64,000 nt of DNA from Pocillopora damicornis (Eukaryota), in NCBI RefSeq assembly GCF_003704095.1, contig NW_020844410.1:124001-188000 (forward strand). The letters are read 5' to 3'. Positions 6,501 through 32,244 of the stretch are shown here, piece by piece. Position numbers and translations under genes: made by a program. Position 1 is the first letter of the stretch. Each line of letters opens with the position of its first letter. Below the pieces are notes generated by a model. The model did not search any database. It was not told the origin of the DNA and saw nothing but the letters and a program-made list of their open reading frames with translations.

Positions 6501-9500
6501 CATACGCGTCGAATAAGACAAATAACGATAAAAGTAATAAAAATGAAATTAAAAAATAATCAAATAAATGTACGATCGGACAAATAACGATGAACACCCT
6601 ATTTCGCAACCATGGCGTGCACTACCACTGAAGGTATGAATTAAGAAAACAAAGAGAGGATAAAGTATGAATCCGGAAGGAAGACATCCAGGGTATTGAA
6701 GGAAAAGGAATTTCCATTAAAGAAAAGAAACGAAACAATGAGGCCATACTTCTCTTTGCTTCTCTCTTTTGGCTTGTTCTTCCTTCTGCTTCTGTCTCGA
6801 TACGTTTTCTGCATGTGCTCTCTACAGTGGAAACCAAAACACAATTATGAATCATAATAATAACTATAACAATAAGAGAGAGTTGACAGCACATTTTCAT
6901 TTTGGACGAATCCCAAGGCGAGCGACGAAGAGAGAGAGACGACGAAGAGAGCGACGAAGTAATCCAACATTTGCTTTGCCCTGTGATCGGTCGAGAAAAC
7001 GTGCACCGTTCTCTCAACCAATCGGTTCCAAAACTAAAAAACCAAACACAACTTGGTCGCCCGCGTTTTCCCGCGTTTAAAGCGCTTTGCAGTTTTTACT
7101 CTGAGTTCTAATTGGCTCTTCAAGGTATATTCTCCTTTCCTCTGATTGGCTGTTGTGATATGGTTCGACTTTTTCGACACTCAATTGAAAAGCGCTCTCG
7201 CAGCAATTTCATGCAATATTGTTCAAAAACGGAACGTTACATAATAGAATCACTCACCGTGAAATTCATAATAAACGCTGCAAAAATACCAAAGAAATCT
7301 TCTGTAGTAGCTGAAGTTGGTTTTTCTCCAAAGAACTTCACTGTTTCTCGGAATTCTTTGGTGCAATTTTCTTGCAAGCTAAGCAGATCAATTAATTCTC
7401 CTTCTGTTTCGTCTATAATGTTCTAAAGGTTTAGATTAAAGACAATATTTTAGACCTCACTGAAACCATTTAAAGAAGTGGCGCAATTACCGTCGCCATA
7501 GCTTCTATTAGGTGTCGGCATTTGTAATTCTATTCCAAATAAATTTGGATAATTTCAGTTTAGAAATTCAGCGTGGCTGTAAAGTTCTGAGGAATCTTAT
7601 GTAAAAACACATCCCATTCACAGGAATTTCTTTTATCCGATTGCACTCTAACCAATTCGGTTTGGTCATGTTCCCGGATGAACATAGTTGCCAGTTTGAT
7701 ATATAAATCTATCGATAAAACCATTCACTGCTTGCAACTCAGAAGAAGCGCGATGTAATGGTTTTCGCGGGGGAAAATTCGGTCTGGGGCCGCCAAATCA
7801 GCTTTTTTTTAATGGAATGGTAAAAGAATAAGCATAAAAAGAGAAAAAACTGGTAAAACTATGGAAAAAAGGTGTACAATGTGGGAAAATAAATGCGGTT
7901 AATAGAAAATGCACGCAAAAATCTCTAAACTAAATGAACGCTGATAGTGAAAACGAAATTCGAAATTGGCTTACCTTTACCGCAAGTGAAAACTTATCGT
8001 TTGGATCTTGTGACTTCAGTGACCGGAAAGCTCCAAGGTCTGACTTAAGCTCCTGTAGAAACATGTACCAAAGCGGAAAGTTATAGAAATGCTCTTTCGT
8101 TTGCGGTTTTAAGACATTTTTTTTGCAATTTGTGAGCTCGTTCGAACAGGACAAAATGAACAGAGCACTAGACAAACCTTCATTCCTTCAGCCAACTCTT
8201 CCACTTCACAAGCCACCATTTGCCCCGAAACTAGAAAAACAAAATCAAAAGTAAATTTCATCCAAGGGCATCAAACAAAAACATTATTTCAAAGCCTAAA
8301 CCAACGTGAGTTGGGTTACTATTGCGTTATTGCGTTTCAATTTGCTTGTTTTCACTCTGTCTCCACATTGGCTACTTGTGGTATGTTCCTCTGTTGTGTT
8401 AAGCCGTGGGAACCATTTTGAAATTCGACAACAATCACTCACATAAGTTCTTAAGCGTACCTTTAGCCGCTGTAGGCACTGTGTCGAGTTCTTCTTTGAT
8501 GTTTAACACTTCAGGGCACTTAGACTCGATGGACTGAACCAAAAAGTGCAGCAAAGTGGATTTGTTGTCTGAGGTTTTGGTGTTGCTGAGCTGTACAGAA
8601 TGAAAGAAAAAAAAACTGTCATTTAAAATATGGAACTCTGTCAAGCAAAAACATCTACAATGGCGAGAACAAGTCACAAAGGACTTCGAAGATCTCCTGA
8701 GCTGCGTTTAGGTATGTAAACTACTTTATAATTTTCAGTAAGAAAGTGACTTTAAAAATTTTGGGAGGTTTTAAATAGTACTTTGTTCATTGACTTTTCG
8801 GGGCCACAGTAGGAAAAGTTAATGTACCTTATTCAAATACTCAATCTTGAATGCAGCGGCTGATCCTATCCTCATATTTCCTTTGTTCATGTAATTACCC
8901 ATCTTTAGAACAAGCTGAAATCAATCAAAAAATCAGTTTATTAATCAGTCTAGTAAATAGGCAGACGGACAGACAGACAGACAGAGAAACACAGACAGAC
9001 AGGCAGATATACAGACAGACAGACAGAGAAACACAGACAGACAGGCAGATACACAGACAGACTGACAGAGAAACACAGACAGACAGGCAGATATACAGAC
9101 AGACAGACAGAGAAACACAGACAGACAGGCAGATATACAGACAGACTGACAGAAAGAAACACAGACAGTTGTATTCGATCTCCTCAGTCTATGATGATCA
9201 CGGTAGATAACAAAATCTAACCTAACTTGACCTCTCTTGTTCCTTCGTGGCTTATTCGTACTCTATTGGCGATTCGTAACGCGCACGAAATTTCATTTTC
9301 AGCTGCCCTTGTAAATTATATGCAGAGGCAACTCTCCATGGGCGTCAAAACGACTCAATTACCCTGAAAGATTACTTTCGACAAAAGATATCTTTCTAAA
9401 ACGCCGCAAAGGCTTTCATAGATAGGTAATCATAAAAGTAAGACACCAAACCTCTAGGATCTTCTTTAGTTTTGTACTATTTCTAAGTTCTCCTGATGCA

Positions 9501-12500
9501 TCAAGAACAGACTCTAAGTCCTGAAAAATAATTCAGTCAACAATATAAAAATGGTAATGATAATGATGAGAGTGATAACGATGATGATGATTATGAGGAT
9601 AGCAATAGTAACTAATAATTGTGTAGAAGAAAAGGAGCACGGGATTAAATAAATTCGAGTCAGTTTCGCTGAGCGAAACTTAAATCAAAGTTTTAATTTC
9701 TCTTCTTTCTTTATTTTTTGAGAGCTTAATGTTTAACGCCTTACCGGTTTAATTTCTTCCACTTTGTCAGCAAAACGAGCCTTGAAGAGCAAAGCTTTCA
9801 GTCGTTGTTTGTACCAAGGCACCTTACTCATCTGCAGAAAAGATAAAGAAACCTCACATACATAACACAAGAAAAGAAACTTAAAACATCGCTATAACTG
9901 AGTCGAAGACAGAGATAAGACCAGCACAAAAACAGAGCTCTTGGCAATTTTCAAAATTCTCTCTATGAAACCTCACATACAGGCAGCAAAATCGCAATCT
10001 CCATATTCCGTCTACATTGCCATGTATTAAGAATATTCAACTGAGAAAAAGTGTTGTGCACAAGAACTTATACACGTATGTTACATCAGGCCATTACCGT
10101 AACTACACGTACCTCGTAACAAAACCTGTCTGCTTTGTCCAACTTGGAAACATCGTCCGCGAAGTATTTAAACTTCTGGAGCTGGAAAGGAAGAGATGGA
10201 AAACATGTTAGTTAACTCAACGAGACCCTTAAGGAATTAAACTCACAACTATATGTAACTGTATGCTCATTCGGCTTCTTTTATTCATACGCTTGGACTC
10301 AAAAAAGCACTTTATGCAACGAAGACGATTTGAGACTCAAGGGAACCAGCCCCGAAAAAGTTTGTTTTTTTGCGCACAATGAAAGTAACGTCACAGAATG
10401 TCTCACCTAACATAGCTGCTGTCCTTACCTCTTTGCTGTCCGGTGCATAGAGGAGAAGCTGTTTCAAATGAGCCTCGCTGAACTTCTCATCGTCCATCGA
10501 CAGGAGTGCTTGTTTTATATCTTCAAATGGCATTTTCAAGTGACCCAACAAAATTGCTGCAAAATGAAACAGAACGCCATTAAATGGTAAATTTTACTGA
10601 CTGTGGACCGCGTGACTCTCACGGTACGAACACATCCCAGTTTCCGCAGCACTGAGTGACTAGAAGTGCTCCTCGAAGAGAAGCTAGTTTGTCCGAGGTT
10701 CCTCGCAGCATATCATCTGTTTATCGTAACCTGTTCGTCATCTTAGGAGGAGAGCAGGAGGAGAAAAGCACTTCTAGAGTGACGGGTCGTGATCAAAAAA
10801 CTCATCGCTTTGCCCAGACCTTTGTATCCAAAGCCAAACACTCACGGTAGTGAGGTGTTAAGCTTCAGCAAAGCATATCGTGAGAAGCGCCAGAGCCGTT
10901 GAGCGGCAAGAAAAGGAGTTCGCGACGCGTCTCTCGCCAATTCAAAAAGGAAAGCTTGCTCGCAGGCTAAGCGGGCTAAATGATGCTACAAATTTTGCGC
11001 GTAAAACAGCCAAAACGTCTTACATGCGAAACATTTTGACCGCAGAAAGGAAATTAGCATTCTTATTACGTACCTATGTTGTAGGTTTTCTTCGGATTCA
11101 TTACTTGTGGTTTCGCAGGCTTTTTCTCCTCTTTACCTAAAAAGGATAAAAATTATTACAATTTGGTTTGCAAAACAGCTACAAACTCAACTTTATGAGA
11201 AATCAAACTCACTTGATACTTTCTGTATGGCACTGAAACTTTGCTCGAGTTGAATGAACTCGATGACTTCTTCTGACGGCTCGTTTTGTCCCAGCTGTAA
11301 TACGAACAAGAGAAAGATTGGTCAGTGGTGGAAAGCTGCAGAGGTTTACTTTGCTAAGGGTCGTTTCAGACAAATTTGACATGGCAATGGTAGAGCACCT
11401 GATTCAAATCGCTTTACTTGAAAATAAACGAACCAAATGAAGACAAACGATTTTACGAGATATGGCCTGTGAATCCGAGAAGTGCCAGAATCGTGTGAGT
11501 TTGCCGCTTCTACTTCAAATCCGCTGCTTCAGATCGCATTCCATTCGTCGCTCTTTTTGACGGGTACATGTCGAATAAGTTGATTGGAGTGCGCCAAAGA
11601 GACAGTTAGGTATGTCAAAGGGTAGGTCTTCCTATTCTCATATTCGCAATTATATGTGTATAAAACGTGACAACGTAGGCAAACTCAAGCAACAAAGTCA
11701 TAATCAGCGTTCTGTTTTCCTTTTGTGTGATGCTTGTGTTGGGCGGGGAGAGCGAATTACAGGTAAGCGTCCTATTTTACATTTCAAATCGCGCCATTTT
11801 TAATTTACTTCGATAAACGAACTAACCTCTTAATTATGTGTTTTAAAATGAAACTTTAAGGCAAAAAAAAGGATACTTTTACAAGATCGTTAATAACAAC
11901 AATCCTTACCTTAGCCCAAACAGTGTCTTCTAAACCAGCGATACTCAGTTTCTCCCAGTTCACTCTCTTCAATTGCATTGGTGCAAGAACGTTTCCAGCA
12001 CCCCCGACAGGGGGAGGAGGAGGGACAGACGGTGGGGGAGGAGGCGGTGGCGGTGGAGGTGGTGGTGCTCCCATGGGGGGAGGAGGTGGAGGAGGAGCGG
12101 CGCTTGTACTTGCGACATCTTGGGTTCCTTGGTAAAAGCAAACGATTTTGAATTAGACTATAAACTCACACACAGAAAATCTAGCATACAGGTATCTGAG
12201 ACTTTGAGAGACTGCAAAGACATGAATTATTAGTAAATAACATGCATGGTAAGTGAGTAAACAACATCGGAACCTCGATCGTAACACCGTTTCAGTCACG
12301 CACTGTAAGGATTCTCTATAAAATGTTAATTATAGTTTAGCGAATTTACCTTCTGTTTCTTTCCCATCTTGGTCTTTCCGCCGAGCTTTAACCGCAGCAT
12401 CTAGGGGATTCTCTACAGCGTTGGGAGAGCTGGGTCTACTACCGGGATCTGAAAAAGAAAGAAGGAGAAAAGTCTGAAAAAGAGCGGCGAAAAAGGGAAA

Positions 12501-15500
12501 GAATCAGTATTTCATGGCGAGCGGAACCCGTGACTATCGACACGCCGGTGCCTTGGCTCACTTAATGTCCTGCACACTGAGGCTGGGACTTGAGCGCAAT
12601 GGCGACTTCGAAAATTCTCGTTAAAAGTGATATTCATTCATTTAATGGGAGAGATAAACATATAAATAATTCTGTTCGGGCTGACTGTACCTCCAAGCTC
12701 TTCTAGTTCTTTCCTCTTCTTCTCGCTTTCATCAAGCGCCTCTTTTGTCTCCATTAATTCCTGTGTAGTAATCGCCAGTTGATGTTGGATTTTCTCCACA
12801 GCTTCCCCAGACGTTTCTCCTGCTCCAACAACAATACCACTGTCTCCACTACCACCTGAAGACGCTGAAAGCGGGGTTGAGGTAACAATTCCCTGCCCAC
12901 GGTTTCCTGGGGCTCCTGGTTCGGGTGAGGTGCCAGTGAAAGGAGCGTGGACCTGTGCTTGCGTCGTCAGGCTGGTTACACTCGACTTCCTTATTTCATC
13001 TGCCAATAGCGCGTCGGCTAACTCCTCTGTCAATAACAGGAGATATTCAAGAAAGTAATCAACACTGCGCAACATGGCTTTAGCCATAGTTAAAAACGGA
13101 TTTCCTAGCCCTGGTTCTTCGAAGGGTGGATAATGCTATCCACTTGGTAAATCTTTATCCGATGGATTACTCAATATGTTTTGTAAACACTCATCCGCTG
13201 GATGGCGATTTATCCCTTGAATAGTGTTGAGGAACCGGGGCCTCGCTATATCGACCCAATTACACTCTTGTTAGATATACCTGGTACCTCTGTTCACTTG
13301 TTTAGTGCAATGAGGCCCGGTCCATTTACTAGCCTGCTACGAATTACCCACGAAATATCCAACATGAAAGTTTTTTTAAACAGAAAAAGCTTTTGCACTC
13401 GACAAATTAAACATCCAATGGCCAACCCACGAAAAGAACTCTCCTGCCCCGTAGACCTTCATTGTATCATAGCTTGTACCATAATCTTCATCTAATATTA
13501 AAGTTATTGAATCTTACCAAGTCCTCCGAGATCCAGTTCCTCGTCGTCATCATCACCCCATCCGGAATCAGGAGTGCCATTTCTGGATCTAACATCCCTC
13601 ACAGGCACAGTATCCAAATCTGACCCTGTGAAATATCAACAATTAATTGTATCCTAAGGTTTTGAAAGTCCTCGGCAGCAAGCCATTTCTGTAAATTTCT
13701 ACTGTAGAAACTGTTATGCTTTATCTCAAAGACTAAAAATTACTAAATAATGCTCGAAGTTGCAGTTTACACCAAACAGAGTGACCATTTCTGTAGCAAT
13801 GTACATACGAAGTGTAAAAACGGTAAAGTCACTGGAGAAGTTTCCACTAACCATAGCTAAATCCTGGGCTATGTCGGCCTCTGACTGCACCAGATGAAGG
13901 CCATTCACCATAAGGCTCCTCTGATCGAACTAACAAGAGAAACATGAACGGATTAGCTCAGTAAGAGCAAAGCCAAAAGCTATCTTATTACAACCAAAGA
14001 TGCAAAATTGTTATAAAAGCATGCTCAACATTTGACGAAATGAAGGGAAAAACAGGCTCGTGGAAAAGAAACTGTTATGAACCAGTATTTATGGAGGGAA
14101 AACCAGTATAAAGCCATACAATTCAATATTAGTAAAAATTAATAAAAGGATTCTGGCAGTCACAAGGAAAATTTTGATGATTGTTGGGAAGGGACAGGGG
14201 TGTTTTCTGTACCTGCTCCTGGCGTTGTTGTACGAGATCTTGGTGCGTCTACAAGCCGTCTTGCTTGCACTCTGTACAGTACATCCACAACTTCATCATT
14301 GTTAGTGTTCAGACTCGGTACAACACCAGCTAAAACAATACGAAGATTTTCAAAGTAAGTTCTTTAGCATCTTTTGCAGGGGAAAGTTTGCCTAGTTATT
14401 CAAAAATATATATCTTCATAAATTGATTTTAAAAATGTACAAATTAGACTCCCTGTAGCTAAATGTCTCAGAAGATCTTCTCTAAAACAGGGAAGAAAAT
14501 AATTTATCTCATTTTATATAGTAAGCAACGAAACCAAACCATGAAGGCAACATCAGGACAACTTGAATATAAAAATAAAAAAAAAAAACAAAAGAATCTT
14601 CTCAATGATTTCACTTTCAAAATAGAATGCACTTGCAGGGAAAGGTCTTGAAATCAAGATGCCTTTCCACTTGTAAAGCCAGTTGAGTTTTATAAATGTA
14701 CAGGTAAGTTATAAATGCAAAGCAAGACTCTTCACATACTCTCCATCTTCCTGGATATCATTCTTGCTGCAGCTCTGTCAAATGCTTGTTGTTCAGCCTC
14801 CGGCAGAAGTTCACTTAGGTAATGTAACATCTGCAGTTTAGCTCCATCATCAAGGACAGGTTCCAGTGCATTGATTAGTCTCTGTACATTTCTAAAGATA
14901 AGAAACAGACCCTTAGATAATAATCCTCTCTACATCCAGAGAATGCTCTCAGACCCCTTTCTGATAGCAATCCCGTATCCACCTAACCATTGGTTATAAA
15001 TTTAAGACAAATAAGACTCATTTTTATAAAATGATGGGAAAGTTTTCTCACTAGTTACCTGTCTCTACTGTACTGATCAAGGCTCTGCTTTACCACAAGT
15101 TGCTCTCCACGTGTAAGTAAATGACTCATCTGTAGGTTGGTGAATCAAAATGAAGCTTTGTTATAATTGTAATTACCAAAAGTCAAAAGTTAATAATGTT
15201 CTGTCCATGTGGCATCTGAAGACAAAAACTGATGAAAAAGTGTTGACATGAATGAGCAGTTCTGGAGAATTAATGAGACAAAATCACATAAAAATTGTAA
15301 AGCGAAGTACCTGTATTTTGAACTGGCGGGAAAGTGTTTGCAAGTCACTTCTGTTATACCCAGTTCCATTTATGAAGAGATCACCTCTGCGGGAGAAAGC
15401 CTTGGATGCTCTTGAGGAACACCTTGACACAGTTGCAGGTCTCTCATTTTCAAAGGTCACAGAAAGCTGTGAAGACTTGCTGGATGACGGCAGGGATGAG

Positions 15501-20038: not shown

Positions 20039-23000
20039 GATGACAACAGAAGAATCAGCTCAAATTTGAAGCTTGAAAAAAAAACTCGAGAATTTTCCTT
20101 GATGTTTTCTTTCCACCACAAAGTCGTTTGTTTATCAAAAACTGATCCTTCTCTCGATTAAGCCATCCATTAATAGCACAAACATCTAAACCAGGGTGCC
20201 AAAGTTATAACAAACTTTCCATAAAGTTTTCCGTTTTGAGAACGCCTTTCGCTTCAGCGATTAATTTGTTATCTTGGAATCCTTGCTGTTTAGATCCACG
20301 ACAAGTTGATGACAATAAAAGCAAGTGGAGATAGAGACACGTTTTCGAAGAGTAGCTTAACGCGGATTGACAGGGTCGGCGACGCTAAATATGAAACCAG
20401 GCAACCAGACCCGCAACAGCGTATAGGTTTCACTGTAGCAACGAAATGTCGACAAAACCGTAAAATTTCTTTCTCAAACACAATGTTTCCTTGGATTTGA
20501 TACTTAACTCACGCTGCAAAATTGAAGAATGAATCCAAGTTGTTAGTTCAAAAACGGAGACGTGATTGTTTAATCCATTCCCTGCGCGGTATTAAGTTAA
20601 AACAATTCTCTACTTCCAATTACGCTGTTGTTCGCCCAGCCAAATCACCACAATTATTCATGCTAATGGCATGACGACTTAAGCACATCCCGACCAAATT
20701 TGCATATCTTTAAAATTCTGAAATCCAACGTAGTCATCGTCGACAGAGAAAAGATTCCGAAGCTGTAGACTGCCGAACCGAAGCTCACTCTGTTCATAAC
20801 AAGCTACGCTCAAAAAGAATCTTGGGTATTTTTCTAAAGAGTCCTTCAGAGTGTTTGAAAGAATTTTGTCATGGGCAAAATAAACATTCCTTGATAGCCA
20901 CCCTTGACCTTACGTCATAATCTGGAGACAAAGCGTTGTAACGCAAACTCTTCATCCGAGAGGAAATGGAAGAAATGAATTACTAAAGAACCCCTAGAGT
21001 AGCAAAAGGACGAATTTCTCATTCTACGCGCTTGGATCCAGCTCTTCAACCGTGACGGAACTAAATTAGTTTTCTGCGAATGTAGATTTTGGCTGTCTTC
21101 ATAGTTCTCATAATATTTATTCAGCGATCTTGTTTTGCTATGTGCTCGATACGTTTACTTAACGAAGAAAAAACTACACGATTGGCCTATGTTAGAGAAA
21201 TGGGACACCCGCGATCCAAGTAAAATCGATCATTAATCGAGTTAAATATTTAATTATAAATATCTGACCTGGCTTGCCAGCTTATGTTGTCAAAAAAAAA
21301 ATGATATGCCGTTCATTTGTGAATGGAAAATTTACCTGATAACTTAGGTCAATTAGGAGAAACATCATCAATAAAAATTTCGAGCGTAAAATCATTTACA
21401 CCTCAAACCATCGGATGTCAGTTCACAAAAGATTTCGAAACTATGAAAAAGTCACGGTATTGTAAATGACGTCATCGGGAATGTTGACGTCACAGTTTGT
21501 GGCTCTGAGGTTCTTTTTCTCAACGAACTTAACTGTCAATTGGAAACAACCACTACCCGATTTAAGTCTAATCATCAGTTTGTCGGAAGGCGAGATTTCA
21601 CTTGACCTGCTGATCCGTTGCTGAGAAAAATTTCTCGTTGTTAACAGAGAAACAGAGGAATACAATAACGATCGACTGAATTGTTTCTCCATGTTTGCAT
21701 CAGTTCATCTCAGATTCAACGAAGTTTAATTTCCTCTCAGCACTGTTTTTTTTTTGTACGTGCCATGTTCAAAGCAGAGGAAAACCCAGATTAGCTTAAA
21801 TAATTTCTCCGTGGTAAGAGGTCAACTTTAAGCATGTTAACTCGCGTGACCCCCTCATTACGCATTTATCACAAAGTCTGGCTTCTTCTTTTTTTAATGT
21901 CGGAAGGCCTTTTTCCACTACTACATTTGATTTTTTTTCATTGCAGTTTAGAACACTTTTACACCCGTCATCCATGATACTATAACGATTTCTTCAGAGA
22001 TGAAGAAGGAAAAAAAAGAAGGATTGTCATTAACATGAACAATGATAAATCATTTACATCTATTACGCTCATGCCAACCTGCACGTCTGCTGAAAGTGTT
22101 AGCAAAAATATTTTTTCTTTATAAAAACAGTAGCGCACAGTGGGAGGTGTGCAGCATACTTCCTCGTGAGACCAATTCTAATCGTTACTGGACTAACGTT
22201 ACTAACGTTTAACTATATGTGTCGCTCACGAGTTCCAGTGCTAGAGAAGAATTTGTATTATAACGAAATCATGCCTTAATTTTGGCCCATTATTCATAGC
22301 TAATCACCAGTCTTAAAATCTTTGTTTTCCTATCTGAGGATGGCCAGAATTCCTATTGCCATCGTAAATTTCTGATTTCTAATCGGAAAAATTTTATTTA
22401 AGTGAGAAGGCTAAATGATTAAAGTGGCCACGCGATTTCAAGTGACAAAATTAAATTTTTAATGAGCTTTGTCACTACACAGACAGGAGACTAGAATAAA
22501 CCGAAAGAGATTAAAGAAGGCTTTGAGGATGGTCTAGATCCCATTACACGGATTTTTTGCTAAAAAAAAAAAAATAGGGGCAATTTTCTTGAAGAACAAA
22601 CCTGACCCACGGTAGTTCCTTTTCATGATGCAAATTTCTTGATTGTCAGTTTCTTGAAACGAAAAGCGATTTTGTTTTCGATTATCTAATCCGTCGTTCA
22701 ATACTTCAACACTCTAATGTCCCCATGAAAGAAAACTAAAAGCTGCTTATATGCTATACAGAACTATGATGAGGTTAACAATCTTTTTCACTACATTTTC
22801 ATCTTCGCGGGCGCGCATAGTAAAGCAGGTTGTGCGCGCGGGCAGGCTTGTTGTCGTGATGGTATTAAGAAAACGTCAAAATCTATTATGACGTCATGAA
22901 GACCGCTCTTTTACAAAGCAACCACTGAGGTGTTTGCACTTACAGAGCTACTCGGCAAACAGCTTCCTAATGTAGATACTTGAGTAAATCTAGACAGCCT

Positions 23001-23078
23001 AAAAGATCGAAGTTTTTAATCAACAATGAGAATTTATCTTAAGAAAAGAATGTGCGCGGTGGATGAACTATTTTTGCC

Positions 23079-26000
23079 ATGACAGAGTCGGAAAAGGATT
23101 CAAGCACTGTCACAGAAGGTATGTGCCTAACATATCCGCAGTAATAACCATAAACTTTTCGCTGGATGGTGTTAATATCCCATTTATGGAAGGTCTTACG
23201 CTCGAGTCAGTGAGATTCTCCGAGATTTTGTTTACAGAGATATATATTTTCGTTGTCTTAAAATTGAACGAACGAAAAATTTGGGAACTCTTCCAGACGA
23301 GATCAAGGAAATAGCTACGTTTTACCAAGTTGTACAAAAAGTTGAAAATTGTTCATGACTTAAAACAAAGCAAACACTTATCTTAGGTAAACTAATAAAA
23401 CAGAATAATTGATTCAAGGGTCACTTGAAAAGAAACCGGTGCAACTCTAATGCTTGTGTATGATCGAGCCAGCACGGAAACAAGATGTGCTTATTTCAAT
23501 TTTTCATTATAAACTTAAAAACAAAGCATTTGATTACAGCGCATCCTGCGATGCCCATCGGAAGCACTTACAAGTTTGAAACAGTTAATTTAGCATTTCC
23601 ACTCTAATAGATCGGCATATCATCTAATTTATAGCGACGTTGTTTACTTTGGAAATCTAATGGATCGAGCCGACAAAGCTTATATTGAATCGCCAGCAGC
23701 TAGGAAGAAGTAGCTGAGTGTTTGCTGCAGGCATAAGTGTACCGGTTTTGATCGATTTTCAATGATGTTTGTCCCTATTAGAAACCGTTTATGACAAATC
23801 AACAGAAAACATCTCGTAATTTCGTTCCACTTCACCACAAAATGATTCCTAATATTCATTTAAACAGAGGTCTCATCAGTAATCCCCGAATTTGATTTGA
23901 TCATTGTCAACTTGTCAAGAGAAACTTCACGAGAAAACTTTTTTTCTTTCAACTTCGCAATAAACATGGTAAAAGCGCGCTTTATCTTAACGTTTTCGCG
24001 CGGACACAGACAGTTCTGACACCACTTCGAATTCCTAGGGAACTAAAACCATTCCTAACCAAGTGAGTCCCGGCGACACTATCAAAACGTAAATAAAGTT
24101 TGATTGGCCGTGAAAACGTAGCAACTTTGATTTTTCAATAACTATAGGCATCACTTTATGCCCTTATATTAAACTAAAATATTATATAGTAATATTATAC
24201 TATCACTTGAAGCGATTCCGGCAAATAATTTTGTTTTAAGATATCTCGCCCTAACTTCTAACCATTGTAATGTTGCTTCTTACTTTCAGGTGCGACGCAA
24301 AACAATCGGAACTTCTTCAACAGTACTTCAGAGTTTTTCAAATGGTAATTTTATAAAATTTATTACTTTCTTCCTCATTTCATTATATTTCTATAAAAGA
24401 TGTTTATCAAACTCTATCGTCCTTTTCTTTCCATAGCAACTGGAAAGTGATTTTACCTTTTATTGCTGTAATTCTACTGTTCTCTGTTACCGTTTTCACG
24501 AAAAAGGACATCACTTTTGCAGTCAACATCTGGGTTTTTCCAAGTAAGCACTGCTTTTATTTCATCAAGCAAACATGATGCACTTTTAGTTACTTCAGAG
24601 CTAAATCAAAGCCAATCCCGCTCCCAGAGCTTCCTTCACTCGTGTCCAGCGAGACTGACTAACAGCTAATTCCTCTTTCACCAATAATGATCGTCTTTAT
24701 AGGTTTTGCTGTGCTCATGGCATCCTATGTGTGTTCAGTTCTCAGTGTGCAAAACTGGATTCCTGCTCTCCGACATCAAGGTATGCGAACAACTCAAAAC
24801 AACTGTTAGAAATTTCTTTAGCTACTTGAGTGTAGTATTTTCAACCATTACTCTCTCCCCATTCCCCTTTGTGTGTTTTTAAATTTAGCCAATCACGTTC
24901 AGAGCGCTTAAATTTGAGTTAGAAGTTTAGATGTGAACATTCACTTTTTTGTGCGTTGAGTTTTGTCAGTTAACAGTTTTTCTTCCTTACGCCTTGCTTT
25001 CGTTTGGATTTTAAGGGCCTCTTATTTAAACGAGATCTAACCCAAACCGCGGTTTTCCGCAAGCAGTTGGCCTCGGTGATTCTCCATAAGAGGGCTGATT
25101 TAATTTAAATAGATGTCCGTCTACTTTTAGGTTTCGGCCTGTTGACACTGTTCGAAAAAAACTGATTATTAGATAAAAGGTTCGGCTAAATTGAAGAAGG
25201 CTTAGAGCGTGGTGACGGCTAAACTTTGTTTAAATAGCCGGTCCCAAGAATTTTGGAAGGATCTATTTTAAGCCAAATATTGATTTCAATTTAGTACATT
25301 TATGACACACGCAAAAACAATACTTGGTACCTCGATTTTTCTTCAGACTTTTGGCAAAATCAAGGTCCGCCATTTTATCCAGTTGTCAATGCAGCCCCTG
25401 CTCCACCCCCACCACCAAGCTACCCTCCCCCTCCTCCACCTAACACCATAAAAGGACATAAGGGCCAACGAATCGACTGTAGAAAACTGTCTTGGGAGCA
25501 ACTCAGCCCAGACCTCCTCAAGCAAGACACCATCTGGAAAAAGGTGAAATTGAAACTGCTACAGCTGTGTACATATAGTTTTATATCAAAATGTTTTAAT
25601 TCGCTGTTATACCGTATAGCTTTGGTAATGTAAAAATTGTTGTTGTTCTGGATCAACACTTGCTGTATGTTTCTTCAAAAACACTATTAATTCCCCCATA
25701 AAAAAAAAATGAAAAACATTTCTAAAAGTTACCGACTCCTTAAGGGGAAAGACGGGGTTTCTTTTTCATTATATGAAGAGACTGTTGTCTATGTTTTAGG
25801 TTACCCTGAGAGCAAACAAGTAATTTGTGCCGTCAGGAATTTAATCCAGATCTTACACTGATCCCCATATGTATTTCATCTCCTTCGTTTAACTCACTTA
25901 GAATAACGCTTTTCTCTGATTGAACTTATTCCTCATTTAGGTTAAAGAACATCTGCCTTTGGAAGGTATTTTTGACTCTGATGATATAATAAGGGAATTT

Positions 26001-29000
26001 TCTGTCACGTCATTGTCAGGTGTGTAATCATGTATTTTCAAAGCATGCTGACACAGTAAATGATTTTATACGCGCTGACCAAAACAAATATGAAGTTCCT
26101 TGCATACATTGTCAAAATATGAGACTATAATTACTTCTTGCCAGCTCGTTGTCCCAGCCGATATATTGACAAATACAGAGTTATGTGACACAGGTTAAAG
26201 AAGCTTGATGATAGCTATAATCTAAAAAAAACCTTCGCTTCCCTTGAAGTCGTTATATGATTAGCTGAATTTTTCACGCATTTTGATTGGTTGTTACCCG
26301 TGATCTATGAGAAGATTGACGCATATATAACGTCACTGTCAACAACTTTTCCGCACGGAACCATGGAATCTAATAGAATCTATTTATTAATTAGTGCCAA
26401 GAGAATATATACTCTTGTCAATACATAATATGTGCAGTGCTTATTTTTCAGTGTTCCTTCTTCCAAGAAAAAATTAACTGTTGATATTCTCTTGCTTCTT
26501 GCCAACATAATGACAGGAAAACCACAGCATTGTTTCTATAACTAGCATGTTATGTAATTTTATTTCAAAGGGAGTTCACTGAAAAAGACCAAAAGAGAAA
26601 ATGCAATGGACGAAAAGAAGATTTTCAATGTCTGTAAGTACTTCAGTGTAACGAAAAAAAAAAGTATTATGTAGCAGCAAACTAACTCCATGTTAAGCAA
26701 AAAAGGTGAAGAATTGAATCCATATATGTGGACCTTAATGTTGTTTATTGAATCGCCATTTAATGTTCCTTGAGTGCGAAATTAACATCTTTGATTAAGG
26801 TGCGTTGTGAAAGAGTTAGCCAAGATAGATTTGCACACAAGATGGATGGGACGAATTTGATTACCACAAAAAATTCCAGGAGATCTTTTTTTCGGGAGGA
26901 AGGAAGATTTCGCGTGACCTACTCAAGAAAGGCCACTAAGGAGGCTATTTAAACCATGGTCTACTGTCTATTTCATAAATGAATTAGCTTACTGATATAG
27001 TTGCTGATCTATCACAGCGATCATTTTGACGCATTACAAGCTTAAAGCAGAAGGCGTTAAACAATGCTTGATGTCCGGGACCACACAGCTTACATCTGAC
27101 GTACTAAGACAGGTGTTGGCATTTGCACCGGATGATCAAGAGGTAACAGCTGTGTAGAGATATGCACATAAAAAATGACAAAACAGAATGATTAGATAGG
27201 AGTGTGCACACGTGCCCTAACTGAACAAGAATGGTTTAACGGATCACAAAGAATTGGGTATAAATGTTTTAGTCAGCGGCTAAAATGAGGATGAAAGTGC
27301 AAAACCCCTCTGTTTGGTTCTTAAAAATTCGGTTCATTTCATTTTTCTTAGCTTTAATTGGTTTGTGTGGACATGTTAAGGGCGTTTATGATTCAATATT
27401 TCATGACAAGTGACTGATTATGGAAACTAGAGGCAATTTTTCTTTTTTGCAAAGATTCACATTTACAGATGAGTCTTTTTTGCAAAGACTCACAGTTAAA
27501 AATATTTTTATTCATACAAAAACTTGAATCTTCATCCAAATGAATTTATATAACCCTGTCGGGCTACTTCACAACTACCATGTTCGTGCACTTTATTAGG
27601 CCCGAGCTTTGCGGAAAATGGAGAGAGAAAACGGGATTTCACTTGAGCCAGCTGAGCGATTTTATCTTCAGGTAACGGTATTATAAGAAAGCATATAGTT
27701 AGCCAGTTGAATACGTTTAAACGTGAGAGGTAAAGGCTGTTTGCTAATTGGGATTTATTTAACTTTATTACGCATTAAAAGGCAGGGCCGGGATTCATTT
27801 TCGATGGTCGCGTTATAACAATCTTCCACCTCTGTAGTGTTTATTGTTGGTTGATTGAAGGCAAGTCAAGACAGAAGCAATTCATGCTCTAAGGCAAAAC
27901 ACTTACAGACAAAACACTTACAGTAATTCATCCACTTTCCCCGCTGTTGGGAGAGTGGATGACGCTATCCGCTGGATAAATCTCTAGCCTACGGATAGCG
28001 CAGTATGTTTTGGTAACTCTTATCCGCTGGATAGCGTTATGCGACTTGTGAACAACTGGGCTCAAGAGTATGAAAGTATATCAGCAAAAGGCGTCACTCA
28101 CACTGTTTGATGGTAATGTATCTGAAATGTCTCTTTTGTCATTCCTAGGTTGCAGCGACTGTGCCTTCCTACAAAGCAAGACTCCGCACTGTTTTACTCA
28201 AAGCGCAGTTACAAGAAAGGATCGCACAAATCAAACCAGTAATAAGTGTATCCTTTTTTTGTTTCATATGATCCATAACTTCTCTTTCTTTCACTTTGAT
28301 AAGGCCTTGCCTTAAATTGATTTACGTCACTCCTGAAAGATTCAAGTCGAATATCGACTGATCAGAAACAGTGACGAATTTCTCCCGCTTATGAAAGATC
28401 GCAGTTCGTTTTCTGTAGCAAACTTTTTGAATCTACGAACATTCATGACAAAAATTCACATTTGATTTGTATTTCAGCATCTTGAAACAGTCATTACCGC
28501 CTGCCAAGAGCTTATGGCCTGTGAAAAACTCCCAAAATTCATAGAGGTACAAGTAAAATGTGCATATCTAAGCAAAGTCTTTTGTTGCACAAACATTTCA
28601 TGTCCATTTACCCACATCTATCATTCATACTTATTCTGCCAATTGTAGATGGTCTTGACCATGGGGAACATCATGAATGGTAGCCAAACCTCCGCCTTTA
28701 AGATAACCTTTGTTACAAAGGCAAGTTTGTTTATTTTGTTCCACTCATAATCTATTTTTACACGCCCTAGTTGACAAAGGAACTGAAAGCCGGCTGACAT
28801 ACCTCTTAGTACACGCACAACAATCTGTATTCACTTCGCGTTCATCCCAGGCAACTTATACAGCAGCTTTAAACATCAGTATATTAAATTGAGCATTTTT
28901 CGATGGAGTCTCCTAAAAAACAAAAACCAAATTAACAACAAAGGCCAATCAGAGAGACTTAAAATACCATTACGAGCCAATCAGAACTCAAAGGCAAAAC

Positions 29001-30719
29001 ACGCAAACCACCTAAAACGCGAGAAAACGTAGGTGATCAAGTTATGATTGTTAAGAATGTGACGCGAGTTTTTTGACCCAATCAAAGAGCAAAGGAAAGC
29101 GAAACCAATGCAAGCCCGGATCACTTCCGACAATAATTGAAAATTCCCTTCAACCATTTTTTTCCCAGCTGATGGATTACAAATCATCTTTGAACAAGGC
29201 CACTTCTATGTTAGACTACCTAACGCGAGTTATCATCACAAAATGTCCGCACATCGCCGCTTTGGGAGATGATCTCAGACACGTGGAAAAAGCATCAAAA
29301 GGTGAGGATATAAAATCATTTTCAACTCACGCTATAATTTGACACAAGAGATTATCTGTCACTGGTAAGGTTTTTTCCTTGTAACTAGCTAGCATTTCAT
29401 TCCCAATTAGTCGCGTACATTGCGTAAATGGAGCTTGACAGATTTAAAAACAACATTGATGTTCAATTGGAGAACGAGTTCTACGCCTTAGTTACCGTTC
29501 TCTGAAGCTCCACTACAGGTTACATTCCAGGCGATATGATTCTTTTGTAACCTTGTTTTCCCGACTTTTCAGTTCCATTTAATTCTCTTGACAAGGAAAT
29601 ATGCGAGCTGTCCGCAGAAGTTGAGGTAAAGCAATCAGTTTCCAGTTATCATTTGAAGTTCTTTGATTTTAAGGCGTTTGAAGCTGCCTTGTTGGAACTT
29701 TCGAATTCTTAGATGTTCATATATTTCAATTCACAGGTCCTTGAGGAAGACGTAGAGAAAATAAACAACGATAGTGTAGAGGAAGACTACTTCAGTGCAA
29801 GTATTGGAGTATCCTTAAAAGCTCAGTATAAGACTTGGACTGCTGNNNNNNNNNNNNNNNNNNNNNNNNNNNNNNNNNNNNNNNNNNNNNNNNNNNNNNN
29901 NNNNNNNNNNNNNNNNNNNNTACTGAATCTAACGGTGAACCTCACTCAAACTGAGCGCCTTTTCCTGGGCGCAGGTAGACTATTTTAGGATTTCCCTGGT
30001 ATCTGAGTTACGATATAGAAAACATCTGGAAAATTACGAATTAGATTTAGCAGGGTCTGTGAGTCACTGAAGGGCTACTCTTAAGAAAATGGAGTTATGG
30101 CCACTCAGTTTTTCGCGAAAACGTTGTGTTATAGTTTTGTGTAAGTAGTATTTTACCGTCACTGCAATAAAAGGGTACTATTTATTGCATACCGGAGCAT
30201 CTTTATCGAGCTGGACATAAGCAGCTGGAAGATCAGGTTGGGTAGTATGATAACCCTTAGCATAATTAGGGTTGGCACAAAATTCCTCATAATTTATTCA
30301 TATTTTTGTAGTGAGAAGTTATCATTCAGAGGGAGTGATTAATTCTCATCCTTTATCGAGTTAGGAATAAGAACTTGTGAAAAAAGCTTCAAGGTCAAGT
30401 CATACGAAGCTTTTCCTCAACAAACTTGTTAGCTTTTTGCTGTTTCGGCAAAGGAAGACCTTAAGGACGTGTTATCGCTTCGGAGGAATGCCAAGCGAAG
30501 CTTTAGCCTCCTTGTGCAGTACTTTGGCGAAGAGAGTGATAAACCGGAGGAATTTTTTGGAATCTTCGCAACATTCCTACGGCAATTTGAGGTATTCATC
30601 AATCTTAATGAATAACTGTACTCCTAAACTAGGTAGGACCCTAAGTGATTGTGATTGGTTTTGATCTTCACGATTTAAATTGTTTTTTTTTCCAGGATGT
30701 GTTGAAGACGTATAGATGA
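23079..30719 (+). CDS. Second formin (delphilin-derived FH1-FH2) with two predicted N-terminal transmembrane segments; 17 coding exons, ~495 aa
   Basis: Exons 23079-23118 (gccATG with in-frame TGA upstream), 24290-24344, 24437-24543, 24703-24780, 25347-25543 (FH1, RKLSWEQL..DTIW), 25941-26019, 26571-26633, 27018-27142 (NVSIIL), 27600-27671, 28149-28238, 28478-28546, 28649-28720 (GNIMN), 29169-29301 (KLMDYKS), 29573-29625, 29737-29808, 30433-30591 (YFGEE..PEEFFGIFATF), 30696-30719 (stop). Total 1488 nt, open throughout. The FH1-FH2 part is secure. The four 5' exons rest on splice signals and phase continuity only. Confidence 0.8.
25035..25260 (+). repeat. Interspersed repeat; second copy at ~36370-36575
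   Basis: Both copies begin tct(a/g)acccaaaccgcggttt..cgcaagca..tgg and share attct.catargagggytg.ttt and ttgacac.gttc..aaaaa. Confidence 0.7.
29809..30432 (+). other. U12-type (minor spliceosome) GT-AG intron
   Basis: Donor GTATCCTT at 29809. Branch-point-like TTTTCCTCAAC at 30411-30421, about 10 nt before the AG at 30431-30432, with no polypyrimidine tract. The flanking exons join in frame. Confidence 0.8.
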
Positions 30720-31399
30720 ATGTGCAACGCTGAGTCACCAAGAAAATAAATTTAAATTCAAAGTAACAAAGTGCCCATTGAAAGGGCGTTTAGTTTCAGA
30801 ACTGTTTATTGTATGTAAACAATCATTACTACATGCATATCTTCGAAAAATTTTACAAAATAAAGCAACTGCTTCTGTGCAGAAAAATTCATGGCAAATG
30901 CGTTTTTGGGTAAATAATTAAGTTGAATAAAGCTTGAATCTTCAAAGATTTTTTACAATGCTATAAAAAGCGAGTCTTTCATTGCGACAAAAATAACACA
31001 GCGACCACAATGAGCCACGAAACTCCTTTCCAGCAACGTCCAAAGAACGCAGAACCACATGTGAATTAAAAATTTGATCGACGCATTCCTCCTTTTAAAC
31101 TACATATAATGATTTCAATCCTTGCCGCTTTCATCATAGGGGGTAATATTTAGCTTTGTAATTTTTTTTTTTCTCTCTCGATGAGTATAAACCTGATCAA
31201 CACGTTGGAACGTAAAGGATGAGCGAAAATATAGCACTTCGGTGCCAAAGTCATGCAAAATAAATTATGGAGCTTTATTGTCACGAGCAAATGCTCGAGG
31301 CGAGATACAATACAGAGTCACCTCAGCTGCTGATTAACCAATTTCTCGCCAATATATTCAATATATATTCAATTTCTCGCCAATATATTCAAAACCCAT

Positions 31400-31502
31400 C
31401 GCTCTGACGAAGGGCTAACGCTCGAAACGTCAGCTTTTTTACTCTTTACGGTGGCTAATTAACGTTTTCAACCCAGTTGTTAACACTAAATTACCTGCTA
31501 TA

Positions 31503-31547
<45 letters not shown>

Positions 31548-31555
31548 TTTATTCA
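31400..31555 (+). repeat. Interspersed retroelement-derived repeat (ctctgacgaagggctaacgctcgaaacgtcagc type); partial copy at ~823-874
   Basis: The segment tttacggtggcyaatt.acgttttcaac.cagttgtt is shared with 823-874. The family assignment comes from recall of marine invertebrate repeats and is not verified. Confidence 0.6.
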
Positions 31556-31593
31556 AAACTGTGATTCGTCAGCTCAAAAATGTATCAAAGGAG

Positions 31594-31732
31594 AACCAAT
31601 CAGAGAGCTTTTTAGAGAGGTCAGGAAGTTAGAATCTAGAGCAACAAGCAATGGCAAGCTTGTGACTTCTACGTGCAATAGGTGAGATAGTTTTGATGTA
31701 TAATTCGCACGTGCATTGTGGCCGTATATAAC
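31594..31732 (+). promoter_or_regulatory. Putative H3 promoter: CCAAT box (aaccaatcag, ~31594) and TATA-like tatataa (~31725)
   Basis: Motifs lie about 240 and 110 nt upstream of the H3 ATG. Confidence 0.45.
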
Positions 31733-31812
31733 TTGGATAGCAATTCTGTTCCACTACCAAGAAGTTCCAGATCCTGCGTCACAGCAACTTTGTACGACTA
31801 TTTCACCAATAA

Positions 31813-32244
<432 letters not shown>

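What the first reader, a model, noticed from the sequence alone, without database searches (positions are those of the whole stretch)
7258..30719. Head-to-head formin pair produced by inverted duplication with N-terminal domain replacement
Seen: the two genes diverge with ATGs ~3 kb apart (20038 and 23079). Every FH2 intron read is at an equivalent position and phase, and several exons are identical in length (63, 69 and 53 nt), while the protein sequences are strongly diverged. Inference: an old local inverted duplication of the delphilin FH1-FH2 module, after which one copy gained TM exons and ends right after FH2, and the other carries PDZ/HN domains plus a huge tail. The two could be co-regulated and might form FH2 heterodimers, which would bring the PDZ scaffold to a membrane (speculative).
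Basis: partly seen in the sequence, partly recalled or inferred. Interest (0 to 1): 0.75.

Follow-up and report, generated by a model that had tools for sequence, protein, structure and literature searches.

The report
Delphilin gene beside a short coral formin
A stony-coral genome carries its delphilin-type formin gene back to back with a much shorter formin gene that has a water-repelling, possibly membrane-spanning front end; the two are probably old local duplicates, but the shared gene layout that suggested this is common to several other formins too.

Summary
Gene A (minus strand, ATG 20038) is a true delphilin: PDZ exons, FH1-FH2, and a tail of about 895 aa. Gene B (plus strand, ATG 23079, stop 30719) has 17 exons and encodes 495 aa. 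RNA contig joints and a transcript-derived protein (490/495 identical) confirm it.

All 12 FH1-FH2 introns sit at the same place and phase in A and B. Three exon lengths are equal (63, 69, 53 nt). FH2 identity is 35.6%. The N gap lies inside B's intron 15, and the coding sequence is continuous across it.

- The intron and exon-length evidence is not specific to A and B. The DIAPH-type paralog shares about 8 of 12 introns and a GBD/FH3-type paralog at least 9 of 12, often with A's exact exon lengths.
- FH2 trees put B beside all delphilins (88/79 and 88/84) inside a DIAPH+delphilin group (95/92).
- AU tests reject B+DAAM (p 0.022). They do not reject B+DIAPH (0.08) or B+coral delphilin (0.11).
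- Being 3 kb apart, among only 10 formin loci in 234 Mb, favours local duplication.

B orthologs were seen only in stony corals. Neighbourhood in relatives, co-regulation and heterodimers could not be tested. The scan's other notes on these genes lie on this same window, not on other DNA.

The parts
3538..20038 (-). Gene A: delphilin (GRID2IP-type) formin, whole span from ATG to stop
   Evidence: Collinear with Nematostella delphilin P0044 over residues 1-581, 831-1225 and 2006-2032. The FH2 of the A-type protein P0039 best matches proteins named delphilin.
19478..20038 (-). A exon 1: two PDZ domains
   Evidence: Pfam PDZ, E 1.1e-27, two stretches. 66% identical to P0044 residues 1-189.
14196..18533 (-). 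A N-terminal exons (HSPs 18533-18357, 17793-17647, 16669-16574, 16093-15992, 15613-15299, 14893-14738, 14327-14196). They include a third PDZ piece and a weak harmonin-N-like piece. Exact splice sites were not set.
   Evidence: tblastn with P0044. Pfam PDZ E 2.5e-4 for 16093-15992 and USH1C_N E 0.0088 for 18533-18357, both below the curated cut-offs.
11910..12104 (-). A FH1 and start of FH2. The exon ends at 11910 in phase 0; its start was not set.
   Evidence: sequence; (tblastn HSP 12104-11904); junction confirmed by P0039.
11213..11294 (-). A FH2 exon, 82 nt (phase 0 to 1)
11074..11136 (-). A FH2 exon, 63 nt (phase 1 to 1)
10429..10556 (-). A FH2 exon, 128 nt
   Evidence: (Pfam FH2 87-132)
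10113..10181 (-). A FH2 exon, 69 nt
9745..9831 (-). A FH2 exon, 87 nt
9452..9520 (-). A FH2 exon, 69 nt
8828..8914 (-). A FH2 exon, 87 nt (GNxMN motif exon)
8461..8590 (-). A FH2 exon, 130 nt (phase 0 to 1)
8178..8230 (-). A FH2 exon, 53 nt (phase 1 to 0)
7975..8052 (-). A FH2 exon, 78 nt, followed by a U2-type donor (GTAAGC)
7258..7422 (-). A last FH2 exon, 165 nt
6750..6821 (-). A post-FH2 exon, 72 nt, outside the finding's coordinates
   Evidence: Best-scoring exon choice against P0039
3541..6228 (-). A tail: a single exon of 896 codons, proline-rich
   Evidence: Open frame. 24 database relatives at 37-98% identity. The last 27 residues are 59% identical to the end of Nematostella delphilin.
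20039..23078 (.). Spacer between the two ATGs. B's transcript contigs start at or before 22930. A 78-bp block at 20872-20948 is conserved in metagenome contigs.
   Evidence: records 16 and 21 begin 70 nt before 23000
23079..23118 (+). B exon 1 (ATG; coding part)
   Evidence: Joint 23116>24288 in 4 of 4 RNA runs
24290..24344 (+). B exon 2
24437..24543 (+). B exon 3 (first hydrophobic segment)
24703..24780 (+). B exon 4 (second hydrophobic segment)
25347..25543 (+). B exon 5: short FH1 and start of FH2
25941..26019 (+). B exon 6, 79 nt
26571..26633 (+). B exon 7, 63 nt
27018..27142 (+). B exon 8, 125 nt
27600..27671 (+). B exon 9, 72 nt
28149..28238 (+). B exon 10, 90 nt
28478..28546 (+). B exon 11, 69 nt
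28649..28720 (+). B exon 12, 72 nt (GNxMN exon, 5 codons shorter than A's)
   Evidence: (the loose end at 28720 continues into exon 13)
29169..29301 (+). B exon 13, 133 nt
29573..29625 (+). B exon 14, 53 nt
29737..29808 (+). B exon 15, 72 nt
29809..30432 (+). B intron 15 (number 11 of the 12 introns shared with A). It has a U12-type donor and a branch-site-like motif near the acceptor, and it holds the N gap 29846-29920.
   Evidence: The same donor type occurs at the homologous site in loci C3358 and C1852.
30433..30591 (+). B exon 16, 159 nt (last FH2 exon)
30696..30719 (+). B exon 17: 7 codons and the stop

Best explanation
Gene A is the coral's delphilin (GRID2IP-type formin): PDZ domains, FH1-FH2 and a long disordered tail. 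Gene B is a separate, conserved stony-coral formin of about 495 aa. It consists of a short N-terminus with two hydrophobic helices, a short FH1, a complete FH2, and nothing after it.

B most likely arose by a local, inverted duplication of the FH1-FH2 part of an ancestral delphilin-lineage gene. After that its FH2 diverged quickly and it gained four small new 5' exons. The duplication is old: at least as old as the split of the coral lineages that carry B, and possibly much older. No DNA similarity is left, and B still has a U12-type intron that A has since turned into a U2-type intron.

Inferred, not shown: B acts as a dimeric actin nucleator and elongator held at a membrane by its N-terminal hairpin, with FH1-FH2 in the cytosol.
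For: - B is expressed and spliced as modelled: 12 GT-AG joints in polyA RNA contigs, and 490/495 identity to transcript protein P0010.
- The FH2 is complete: Pfam FH2 E 2e-70, profile positions 12-371 of 372. B keeps 15-17 of 19 columns that are invariant in 28 delphilin, DIAPH and DAAM rows.
- B orthologs turned up in 9 of the 11 hits. The named ones come from Stylophora, Pocillopora, Porites and Desmophyllum.
- A is a delphilin. In the tree it sits inside the cnidarian delphilins at 95/90.
- B's highest identity among the 10 formin loci of this genome is to A: 33-35% against 20-28%.
- ML trees group B with the delphilins at 88/79 (45 rows) and 88/84 (36 rows). That group sits within DIAPH+delphilin at 95/92 and 100/98.
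- In 10 columns that tell delphilin from DIAPH, B has the delphilin residue in 7, the DIAPH residue in 1, and another in 2. In 8 columns that tell cnidarian from bilaterian delphilins, B has the cnidarian state in 4, the bilaterian in 1, and another in 3.
- B+DAAM is rejected (p-AU 0.022). B + coral delphilin is not rejected (p 0.11).
- With 10 loci in 234 Mb, two lying within about 30 kb by chance has odds of roughly 0.01 (my arithmetic).
- Two hydrophobic 19-residue windows (mean Kyte-Doolittle 1.7-2.3) lie at about residues 33-55 and 59-83 in 5 of 5 orthologs. Nothing above 1.31 occurs past residue 140.
Against: - B lies outside the delphilin clade, which is monophyletic without B at 87/82 and 84/77. 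All supports that join B to delphilin are below the 95/80 star level.
- B+DIAPH costs only 4.8 lnL units and is not rejected (p 0.08).
- B's stem is long (1.47-1.61 changes per column), so its position may be pulled by long-branch effects in either direction.
- The tree has no named FMN, FHOD, INF, PHCF or MWHF references. Those subtypes are represented only by this genome's own loci. I rebuilt their rows from HMM hits on exon translations, using an HMM made mostly from delphilin, DIAPH, DAAM and B sequences.
- The shared introns and exon lengths do not single out A and B.
- No PDZ or HN remnant lies near B, so 'replacement' as opposed to partial duplication cannot be told apart.
- Adjacency in other species was not testable.
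- The membrane anchor rests on hydropathy alone. The AlphaFold model was poor (mean pLDDT 47, N-terminus under 50).
Confidence: 0.6

Rival explanations
1. B is an ancient third branch of the DIAPH/delphilin group. On this view it split off before cnidarians and bilaterians diverged, as the sister of all delphilins or of DIAPH. It then survived only in corals, or has gone unrecognised elsewhere. Its place next to delphilin would be a relic of a very old tandem duplication.
For: - This is the literal ML topology in both trees.
- B keeps the U12-type intron found in the DIAPH-type locus and in C3358, while A has a U2-type intron there.
- B's stem is long.
- Pruyne 2017 (PMC5628938, passages read) derives GRID2IP from a DIAPH-like duplicate with a replaced N-terminus.
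Against: - It needs losses in every other lineage sampled. One search found B-type proteins only in stony corals, but that search scores only proteins that share exact words with the query and are 270-861 aa long.
- B shares 4 cnidarian-specific against 1 bilaterian-specific delphilin residue.
- Placing B with coral delphilins is not rejected (p 0.11).
Confidence: 0.25
2. A and B are not direct duplicates. On this view B comes from the DIAPH-type or another formin, was moved next to delphilin by rearrangement or chance, and resembles A only through shared ancestral features.
For: - B+DIAPH is not rejected (p-AU 0.08).
- The intron pattern is shared with C1852 and C3358.
- tblastn with P0003 gave similar exon-level scores on A and on C1852.
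- NCBI's automatic name for the Stylophora ortholog is 'DAAM1-like'.
Against: - Chance adjacency of two of 10 loci in 234 Mb is about 0.01 (my arithmetic).
- B is more like A than like C1852 (33-35% against 28%).
- 7 against 1 diagnostic columns favour delphilin over DIAPH.
- B+DAAM is rejected (p 0.022).
- B has no GBD, FH3 or DAD domain.
Confidence: 0.1
3. B is a decaying or mis-assembled partial copy of a formin, that is, a pseudogene or an annotation artefact.
For: - The public P. damicornis model P0012 lacks three exons.
- A Stylophora model, P0011, fuses B to histone H3.
- An assembly gap lies inside the gene.
Against: - The reading frame is intact over 17 exons.
- Spliced polyA RNA contigs appear in 4 of 4 runs.
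- Orthologs of 492-514 aa are 62-88% identical, with 72% mean column identity and a conserved N-terminus.
- The gap is intronic.
Confidence: 0.02

Closest known systems
Delphilin / GRID2IP formin subtype (Pruyne 2016, PMC5047451; Pruyne 2017, PMC5628938; passages read)
   Same: Gene A has PDZ domains, a weak harmonin-N-like piece, FH1 and FH2. It is 58-60% identical in FH2 to Nematostella delphilin and sits inside the cnidarian delphilin clade. Gene B's FH2 is closest to this subtype by identity, by tree position and by diagnostic residues.
   Different: B has no PDZ or HN domains and no tail. It is less than a quarter the length of Nematostella delphilin (495 aa against 2032), and its FH2 falls outside the delphilin clade on a long branch. 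A's 896-codon single-exon tail is far longer than in the mollusc and vertebrate delphilins (1064-1302 aa in total), but Nematostella delphilin (2032 aa) has it too.
Diaphanous (DIAPH) formins
   Same: They belong to the same FH2 supergroup (95/92). The DIAPH-type locus C1852 shares about 8 of the 12 intron sites and has a U12-type intron (AT-AC type donor) at the site where B has its U12-type intron. Human diaphanous-related formin genes all hold minor introns (PMC6865273, one passage read).
   Different: B lacks the GBD, FH3 and DAD domains, and its identity to C1852 is only 28%.
Plant class I formins (membrane-anchored FH1-FH2; Grunt et al. 2008, PMC2386819, passages read)
   Same: They share the layout of a membrane-spanning N-terminal part followed directly by FH1-FH2. 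That paper also notes signal-peptide plus transmembrane combinations as 'rare in invertebrates'.
   Different: They are not related. Plant formins hit B only at E 1.7e-10 and 4.1e-4. Plant class I formins have a signal peptide, an extracellular proline-rich stretch and one transmembrane helix. B has two adjacent hydrophobic segments, and whether it has a signal peptide was not tested.

Membership tests
Formin (FH2 domain protein), gene B | Complete FH2 domain (Pfam PF02181) above the curated cut-off | tested here: met
   P0010, which is 490/495 identical to the window's B: 238 bits against a cut-off of 34.8, profile 12-371 of 372. Five exons of the window matched the profile in order.
Formin, gene B | Proline-rich FH1 directly before FH2 | tested here: met
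   Exon 5 holds two short proline runs just before the FH2 start. It is shorter than A's FH1.
Delphilin / GRID2IP, gene A | N-terminal PDZ (and HN) domains before FH1-FH2 | tested here: met
   PDZ E 1.1e-27 with two stretches in exon 1. A third PDZ piece and USH1C_N are weak, below cut-off. A is collinear with P0044, which carries three PDZ stretches; PF23116 comes's precomputed list.
Delphilin / GRID2IP, gene A | FH2 falls in the GRID2IP clade | tested here: met
   A groups with P0039, then Nematostella, then Dendronephthya delphilins at 100/99, 98/97 and 95/90.
Delphilin / GRID2IP, gene B | N-terminal PDZ/HN domains | tested here: not met
   No Pfam domain other than FH2 in P0010. No match of P0044's N-terminal part in 22000-32000.
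Delphilin / GRID2IP, gene B | FH2 falls in the GRID2IP clade | tested here: inconclusive
   B is sister to the whole clade at 88/79 and 88/84, not inside it. Placing it with coral delphilins is not rejected (p 0.11), and neither is placing it with DIAPH (p 0.08).
DAAM (NCBI's automatic name for the Stylophora ortholog of B) | GBD/FH3 N-terminus and FH2 in the DAAM clade | tested here: not met
   No Drf_GBD or Drf_FH3 domain. B+DAAM has p-AU 0.022. Identity to the DAAM-type locus C4129 is 26-28%.
U12-type (minor) intron, B intron 15 | Extended donor consensus and a branch-site motif close to the acceptor (consensus recalled from memory) | tested here: met
   The donor and the branch-site-like motif can be read. 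The same donor type occurs at the homologous site in C3358 and C1852. Splicing by the minor spliceosome itself was not tested.
Integral membrane protein, gene B | Transmembrane helices predicted by a dedicated tool, or shown by experiment | tested here: inconclusive
   Only Kyte-Doolittle windows were used: two segments in 5 of 5 orthologs. The AlphaFold model shows helices at 34-51 and 54-79, but with pLDDT under 50. No TMHMM-type tool was available.

The most novel reading that the evidence does not exclude
B is a stony-coral formin lineage that is an integral membrane protein. In this reading a two-helix hairpin holds a minimal FH1-FH2 actin nucleator at a membrane. It was born from the delphilin locus and has been kept for the whole history of stony corals. 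It might pair, through FH2 heterodimers or shared regulation, with the PDZ-scaffold delphilin next door.
Probability: 0.3. Interest if true: 0.7.

Novelty: new variant of a known kind. Interest (0 to 1): 0.45.

Why it matters
Published animal formin surveys count nine subtypes, eight of them in cnidarians (Pruyne 2016, passages read). This genome has ten FH2 loci, and B fits none of the named architectures. If B really is membrane-anchored, it would be an animal counterpart of plant class I formins. It would also be a clean case of a new protein built from a duplicated FH1-FH2 module.

The work also gives a caution for gene-structure arguments. Formin FH2 introns, even exact exon lengths and a U12-type intron, are conserved across distant subtypes, so they cannot date or pair duplicates.

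On the practical side, public models of B are wrong or misnamed. One has missing exons, one is fused to histone H3, and the names given include 'DAAM1-like' and 'Delphilin'.

Tried and rejected
- **Exon-level blastp of B frames against A frames.** It found only 6 of the 12 exon pairs. A weak hit of a B intron-1 frame to A's third PDZ exon (E 0.027 among about 58,000 segment pairs) was dismissed as chance.
- **tblastn of P0003 against all formin loci.** It was too insensitive to rank paralogs, because the exons are short.
- **The one library-wide HMMER search, with a 44-aa B exon.** It returned 9 hits. Seven were B-type fragments or orthologs and two were unrelated repeat proteins (P0007, P0009). 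No other formin subtype appeared.
- **Automatic splice-site finder.** It mis-set 2 of B's RNA-proven donors (28552 for 28546, 28711 for 28720). It also mis-set joints where an exon was missing from the chain. Intron calls in the other loci are therefore approximate. I corrected C1852 and C3358 by eye at four joints. None of the paralog models is backed by RNA.
- **A+B-only introns as a shared derived trait.** I considered intron 1 and the one after the 53-nt exon. I rejected the idea because the DAAM-type locus has phase-0 introns within 3 profile positions of both.
- **Synteny in relatives.** Seven metagenome contigs with A's exon 1 (L047-L053; four further hits, L054-L057, are distant PDZ matches) reach at most 3.3 kb upstream and show no B exon. 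Matching contig lengths between A-tail hits and B orthologs gave no shared contig.
- **Other blanks.** The ESM Atlas search with B's first 100 residues gave no usable hit. No inverted DNA repeats of 40 nt or more lie in 3500-31000. The AlphaFold model of B from 8 sequences had mean pLDDT 47, so I ran no fold search.
- **Literature.** Two searches for membrane-anchored animal or coral formins (8 and 16 papers) showed none on a coral formin by title; 12 of the 16 were listed. I opened only PMC11730148, PMC2386819 and PMC6982070, by passages.
- **Supplements.** I did not open the supplementary tables and alignments of Pruyne 2016/2017 and Grunt 2008, which list formins per species, because supplements are closed. 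They could show whether a B-like or transmembrane formin was already catalogued.

Full report
**What is there**

The window has 38% G+C and six N runs. It is contig C1045:124001-188000 of a 234-Mb assembly in 4,393 contigs. The public protein pdam_00008753 of Pocillopora damicornis (P0012) is 417/420 identical to my model of gene B. The genome is therefore that coral or a very close relative.

Two formin genes point away from each other. Gene A is on the minus strand with its ATG at 20038. Gene B is on the plus strand with its ATG at 23079.

**Gene B**

Contigs of four polyA RNA runs from one study were laid on 23000-28999. They gave 12 GT-AG joints, plus a loose end at 28720 that runs on into the next exon. 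A 44-aa exon used as query found B-type fragments and orthologs, including a 492-aa Stylophora protein, P0003. The follow-up search with P0003 added a 495-aa transcript-derived protein, P0010.

With these I set 17 exons. Joined in a local script, they give 495 codons. The product is 490/495 identical to P0010, with five substitutions and no gap.

The protein has four parts:
- about 30 N-terminal residues;
- two hydrophobic segments, at about 33-55 and 59-83, present in 5 of 5 orthologs;
- a short FH1;
- a complete FH2 (Pfam E 2e-70), followed by only 7 further residues.

**The assembly gap**

The gap at 29846-29920 lies inside intron 15 (29809-30432). Exon 15 ends at 29808 in phase 0 and exon 16 starts at 30433. 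P0010 runs straight across this joint. The gap therefore does not touch the coding sequence. I laid no reads on it and did not fill it.

**Gene A**

A is collinear with Nematostella delphilin (P0044, 2032 aa) in three stretches:
- the N-terminal region, residues 1-581, which includes the PDZ domains;
- the FH2, residues 831-1225;
- the last 27 residues.

Exon 1 holds two PDZ domains (E 1.1e-27). A third PDZ piece and a harmonin-N-like piece are weak.

The tail is one exon of 896 codons (6228-3541). It has 24 relatives, mostly ORFs of about 850 aa in other assemblies at 43-58% identity. One is a 1240-aa transcript protein, P0039, that joins an A-type FH2 to the tail. P0039 confirmed my hand-set FH2 exon joins (313/360 identical). 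It also revealed an extra 72-nt exon at 6821-6750.

The best matches of P0039's FH2 are proteins named delphilin from Nematostella (61%), an octocoral, molluscs, an acorn worm and a bird. DAAM and DIAPH proteins come after these. A is a delphilin, and its long tail is shared at least with the anemone.

A global alignment of the two FH2 regions gives 126/354 identical residues, or 35.6%. Eleven of 12 introns fall in the same column and phase. The twelfth is at the same site once end gaps are allowed for. Exon lengths of 63, 69 and 53 nt are equal, and the rest differ by one to five codons. No DNA-level inverted repeat of 40 nt or more remains.

**Is the shared structure special to A and B? No.**

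A Pfam FH2 search of the whole genome found 31 exon matches at 10 loci on 9 contigs. I fetched 20 kb around the other eight loci. I then built a local FH2 profile from 36 full domains and chained exon hits and splice sites. Two loci were corrected by eye.

| Locus | Type | How typed | A/B intron sites shared | Exon lengths |
|---|---|---|---|---|
| C1852 | DIAPH-type | 100/100 with named DIAPHs | about 8 of 12 | 128, 69, 87, 130 nt, as in A |
| C3358 | GBD/FH3-type | 98/80 with an unnamed GBD-FH3-FH2 protein | at least 9 of 12 | 128, 69, 87, 69 nt, as in A |
| C4129 | DAAM-type | groups with named DAAMs (98/86); 56% identity to two named DAAM proteins | about 3 of 12 | not compared |

The two sites that C1852 and C3358 lack have near matches in the DAAM-type locus. 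The pattern is therefore old and widely kept. These paralog models have no RNA support, and the automatic finder erred at two of B's known donors.

**A U12-type intron**

At the eleventh shared site the donor types differ:
- B has a GTATCCTT-type donor with a branch-site-like motif close to the acceptor.
- C3358 has the same donor type.
- C1852 has the ATATCCTT type.
- A has a plain GTAAGC donor.

One paper passage states that all human diaphanous-related formin genes hold minor introns (PMC6865273). The U12-type state is thus ancestral and A has changed. B did not copy A's present structure.

**Phylogeny**

I ran an ML tree under LG+C20+F+G4 with 45 rows and 374 columns. I left out only the redundant rebuilt row of B. 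Results:
- DIAPH + B + delphilin group at 95/92.
- B + all delphilins group at 88/79.
- Delphilins without B group at 87/82.
- B's stem is 1.47 changes per column.

Dropping nine long rows gave the same picture at 100/98, 88/84 and 84/77.

| AU test: rows held together | Cost in lnL | p-AU |
|---|---|---|
| B + the two coral A-type rows | 10.7 | 0.11 |
| B + DIAPH | 4.8 | 0.08 |
| B + DAAM | 16.5 | 0.022 |

Two planned tests, B with hexacoral delphilins and B with all cnidarian delphilins, did not finish and were not resumed.

Identity of B to the other loci is 33-35% to A, 28% to the DIAPH-type locus and 20-28% to the rest. Diagnostic columns favour delphilin over DIAPH by 7 to 1, and cnidarian over bilaterian delphilin by 4 to 1. 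These are small samples.

**Reading**

B belongs to the DIAPH/delphilin group and is most likely a delphilin-side duplicate. The data do not fix when it split. Adjacency is the strongest extra argument: with 10 loci in 234 Mb, a chance neighbour within about 30 kb has odds near 0.01 (my arithmetic).

B-type proteins were found only in stony corals. The named hits are from Stylophora, Pocillopora, Porites and Desmophyllum, and four more are unnamed transcript assemblies. This is 9 of the 11 hits. That search, however, sees only proteins of 270-861 aa that share exact words with the query.

No PDZ remnant lies near B. Partial duplication and later N-terminal replacement therefore cannot be told apart.

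**Function (inferred)**

B keeps 15-17 of 19 FH2 columns that are invariant across 28 reference rows, and it has an FH1. It probably dimerises and builds actin filaments.

The two hydrophobic helices suggest a membrane hairpin, with both protein ends in the cytosol. This rests on hydropathy alone, because the AlphaFold model was poor. Grunt et al. 2008 already noted rare signal-peptide/transmembrane formins in invertebrates (passages).

FH2 heterodimers are documented only for close paralogs (PMC6982070, passages). At 35.6% identity, an A/B heterodimer is a long shot and was not tested.

Co-regulation was also not tested. B's RNA contigs begin at or before 22930 and A's transcription start is unknown. 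The two starts may be up to about 2-3 kb apart.

**Limits**

- Paper supplements were not seen.

Noticed in passing
window 29809-30432 (+); G000 C3358 and C1852 (loci L045/L046, L033/L034): A U12-type donor sits at the same FH2 intron site in three formin paralogs: B and C3358 (GT-AG type) and the DIAPH-type locus (AT-AC type). Delphilin gene A has a U2-type donor there. This looks like an ancient minor intron that was converted in one paralog.
   Followed up: partly
window 31744-32241 (+): A histone H3-like coding stretch lies about 1 kb downstream of B on the same strand. It is 85% identical to the C-terminal part of a Stylophora gene model (P0011) that wrongly fuses B to histone H3. The B-to-H3 order is therefore shared by the two genera.
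   Followed up: partly
window 3541-6228 (-): Delphilin's 896-codon single-exon tail is conserved at 43-58% identity in many coral assemblies. Its last 27 residues are 59% identical to the end of Nematostella delphilin, which suggests a functional C-terminal motif in an otherwise disordered tail.
   Followed up: partly
window 20872-20948: A 78-bp block about 850 bp upstream of A's ATG is 86-89% identical in six metagenome contigs (five align 78 bp, one 74 bp), while its flanks are 70-80% identical or do not align. It may be A's 5' exon or a promoter element.
   Followed up: no
window 8950-9210: A tandem repeat with a unit of about 42 nt sits in the A intron between exons 9520-9452 and 8914-8828. 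It reads as repeated short peptides in several frames of the ORF lists.
   Followed up: no
window 23079-30719 (public models P0012, P0003, P0017, P0011): Public annotations of B disagree. The P. damicornis model lacks exons 2, 3 and 12. The Stylophora protein is named 'DAAM1-like', the Desmophyllum fragment is named 'Delphilin', and another Stylophora model is named 'histone H3'.
   Followed up: yes
window 11869-11876 (-): A second U12-donor-like motif lies 34 nt downstream of the U2-type donor that ends A's FH1 exon. The transcript protein P0039 supports the U2 site. The motif may be chance or a relic.
   Followed up: no
window 26633-27020 (+): In one of the four RNA runs (X3), the joint into B exon 8 lands 2 nt later, with two other letters in between. 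This is probably a strain difference at the acceptor.
   Followed up: no
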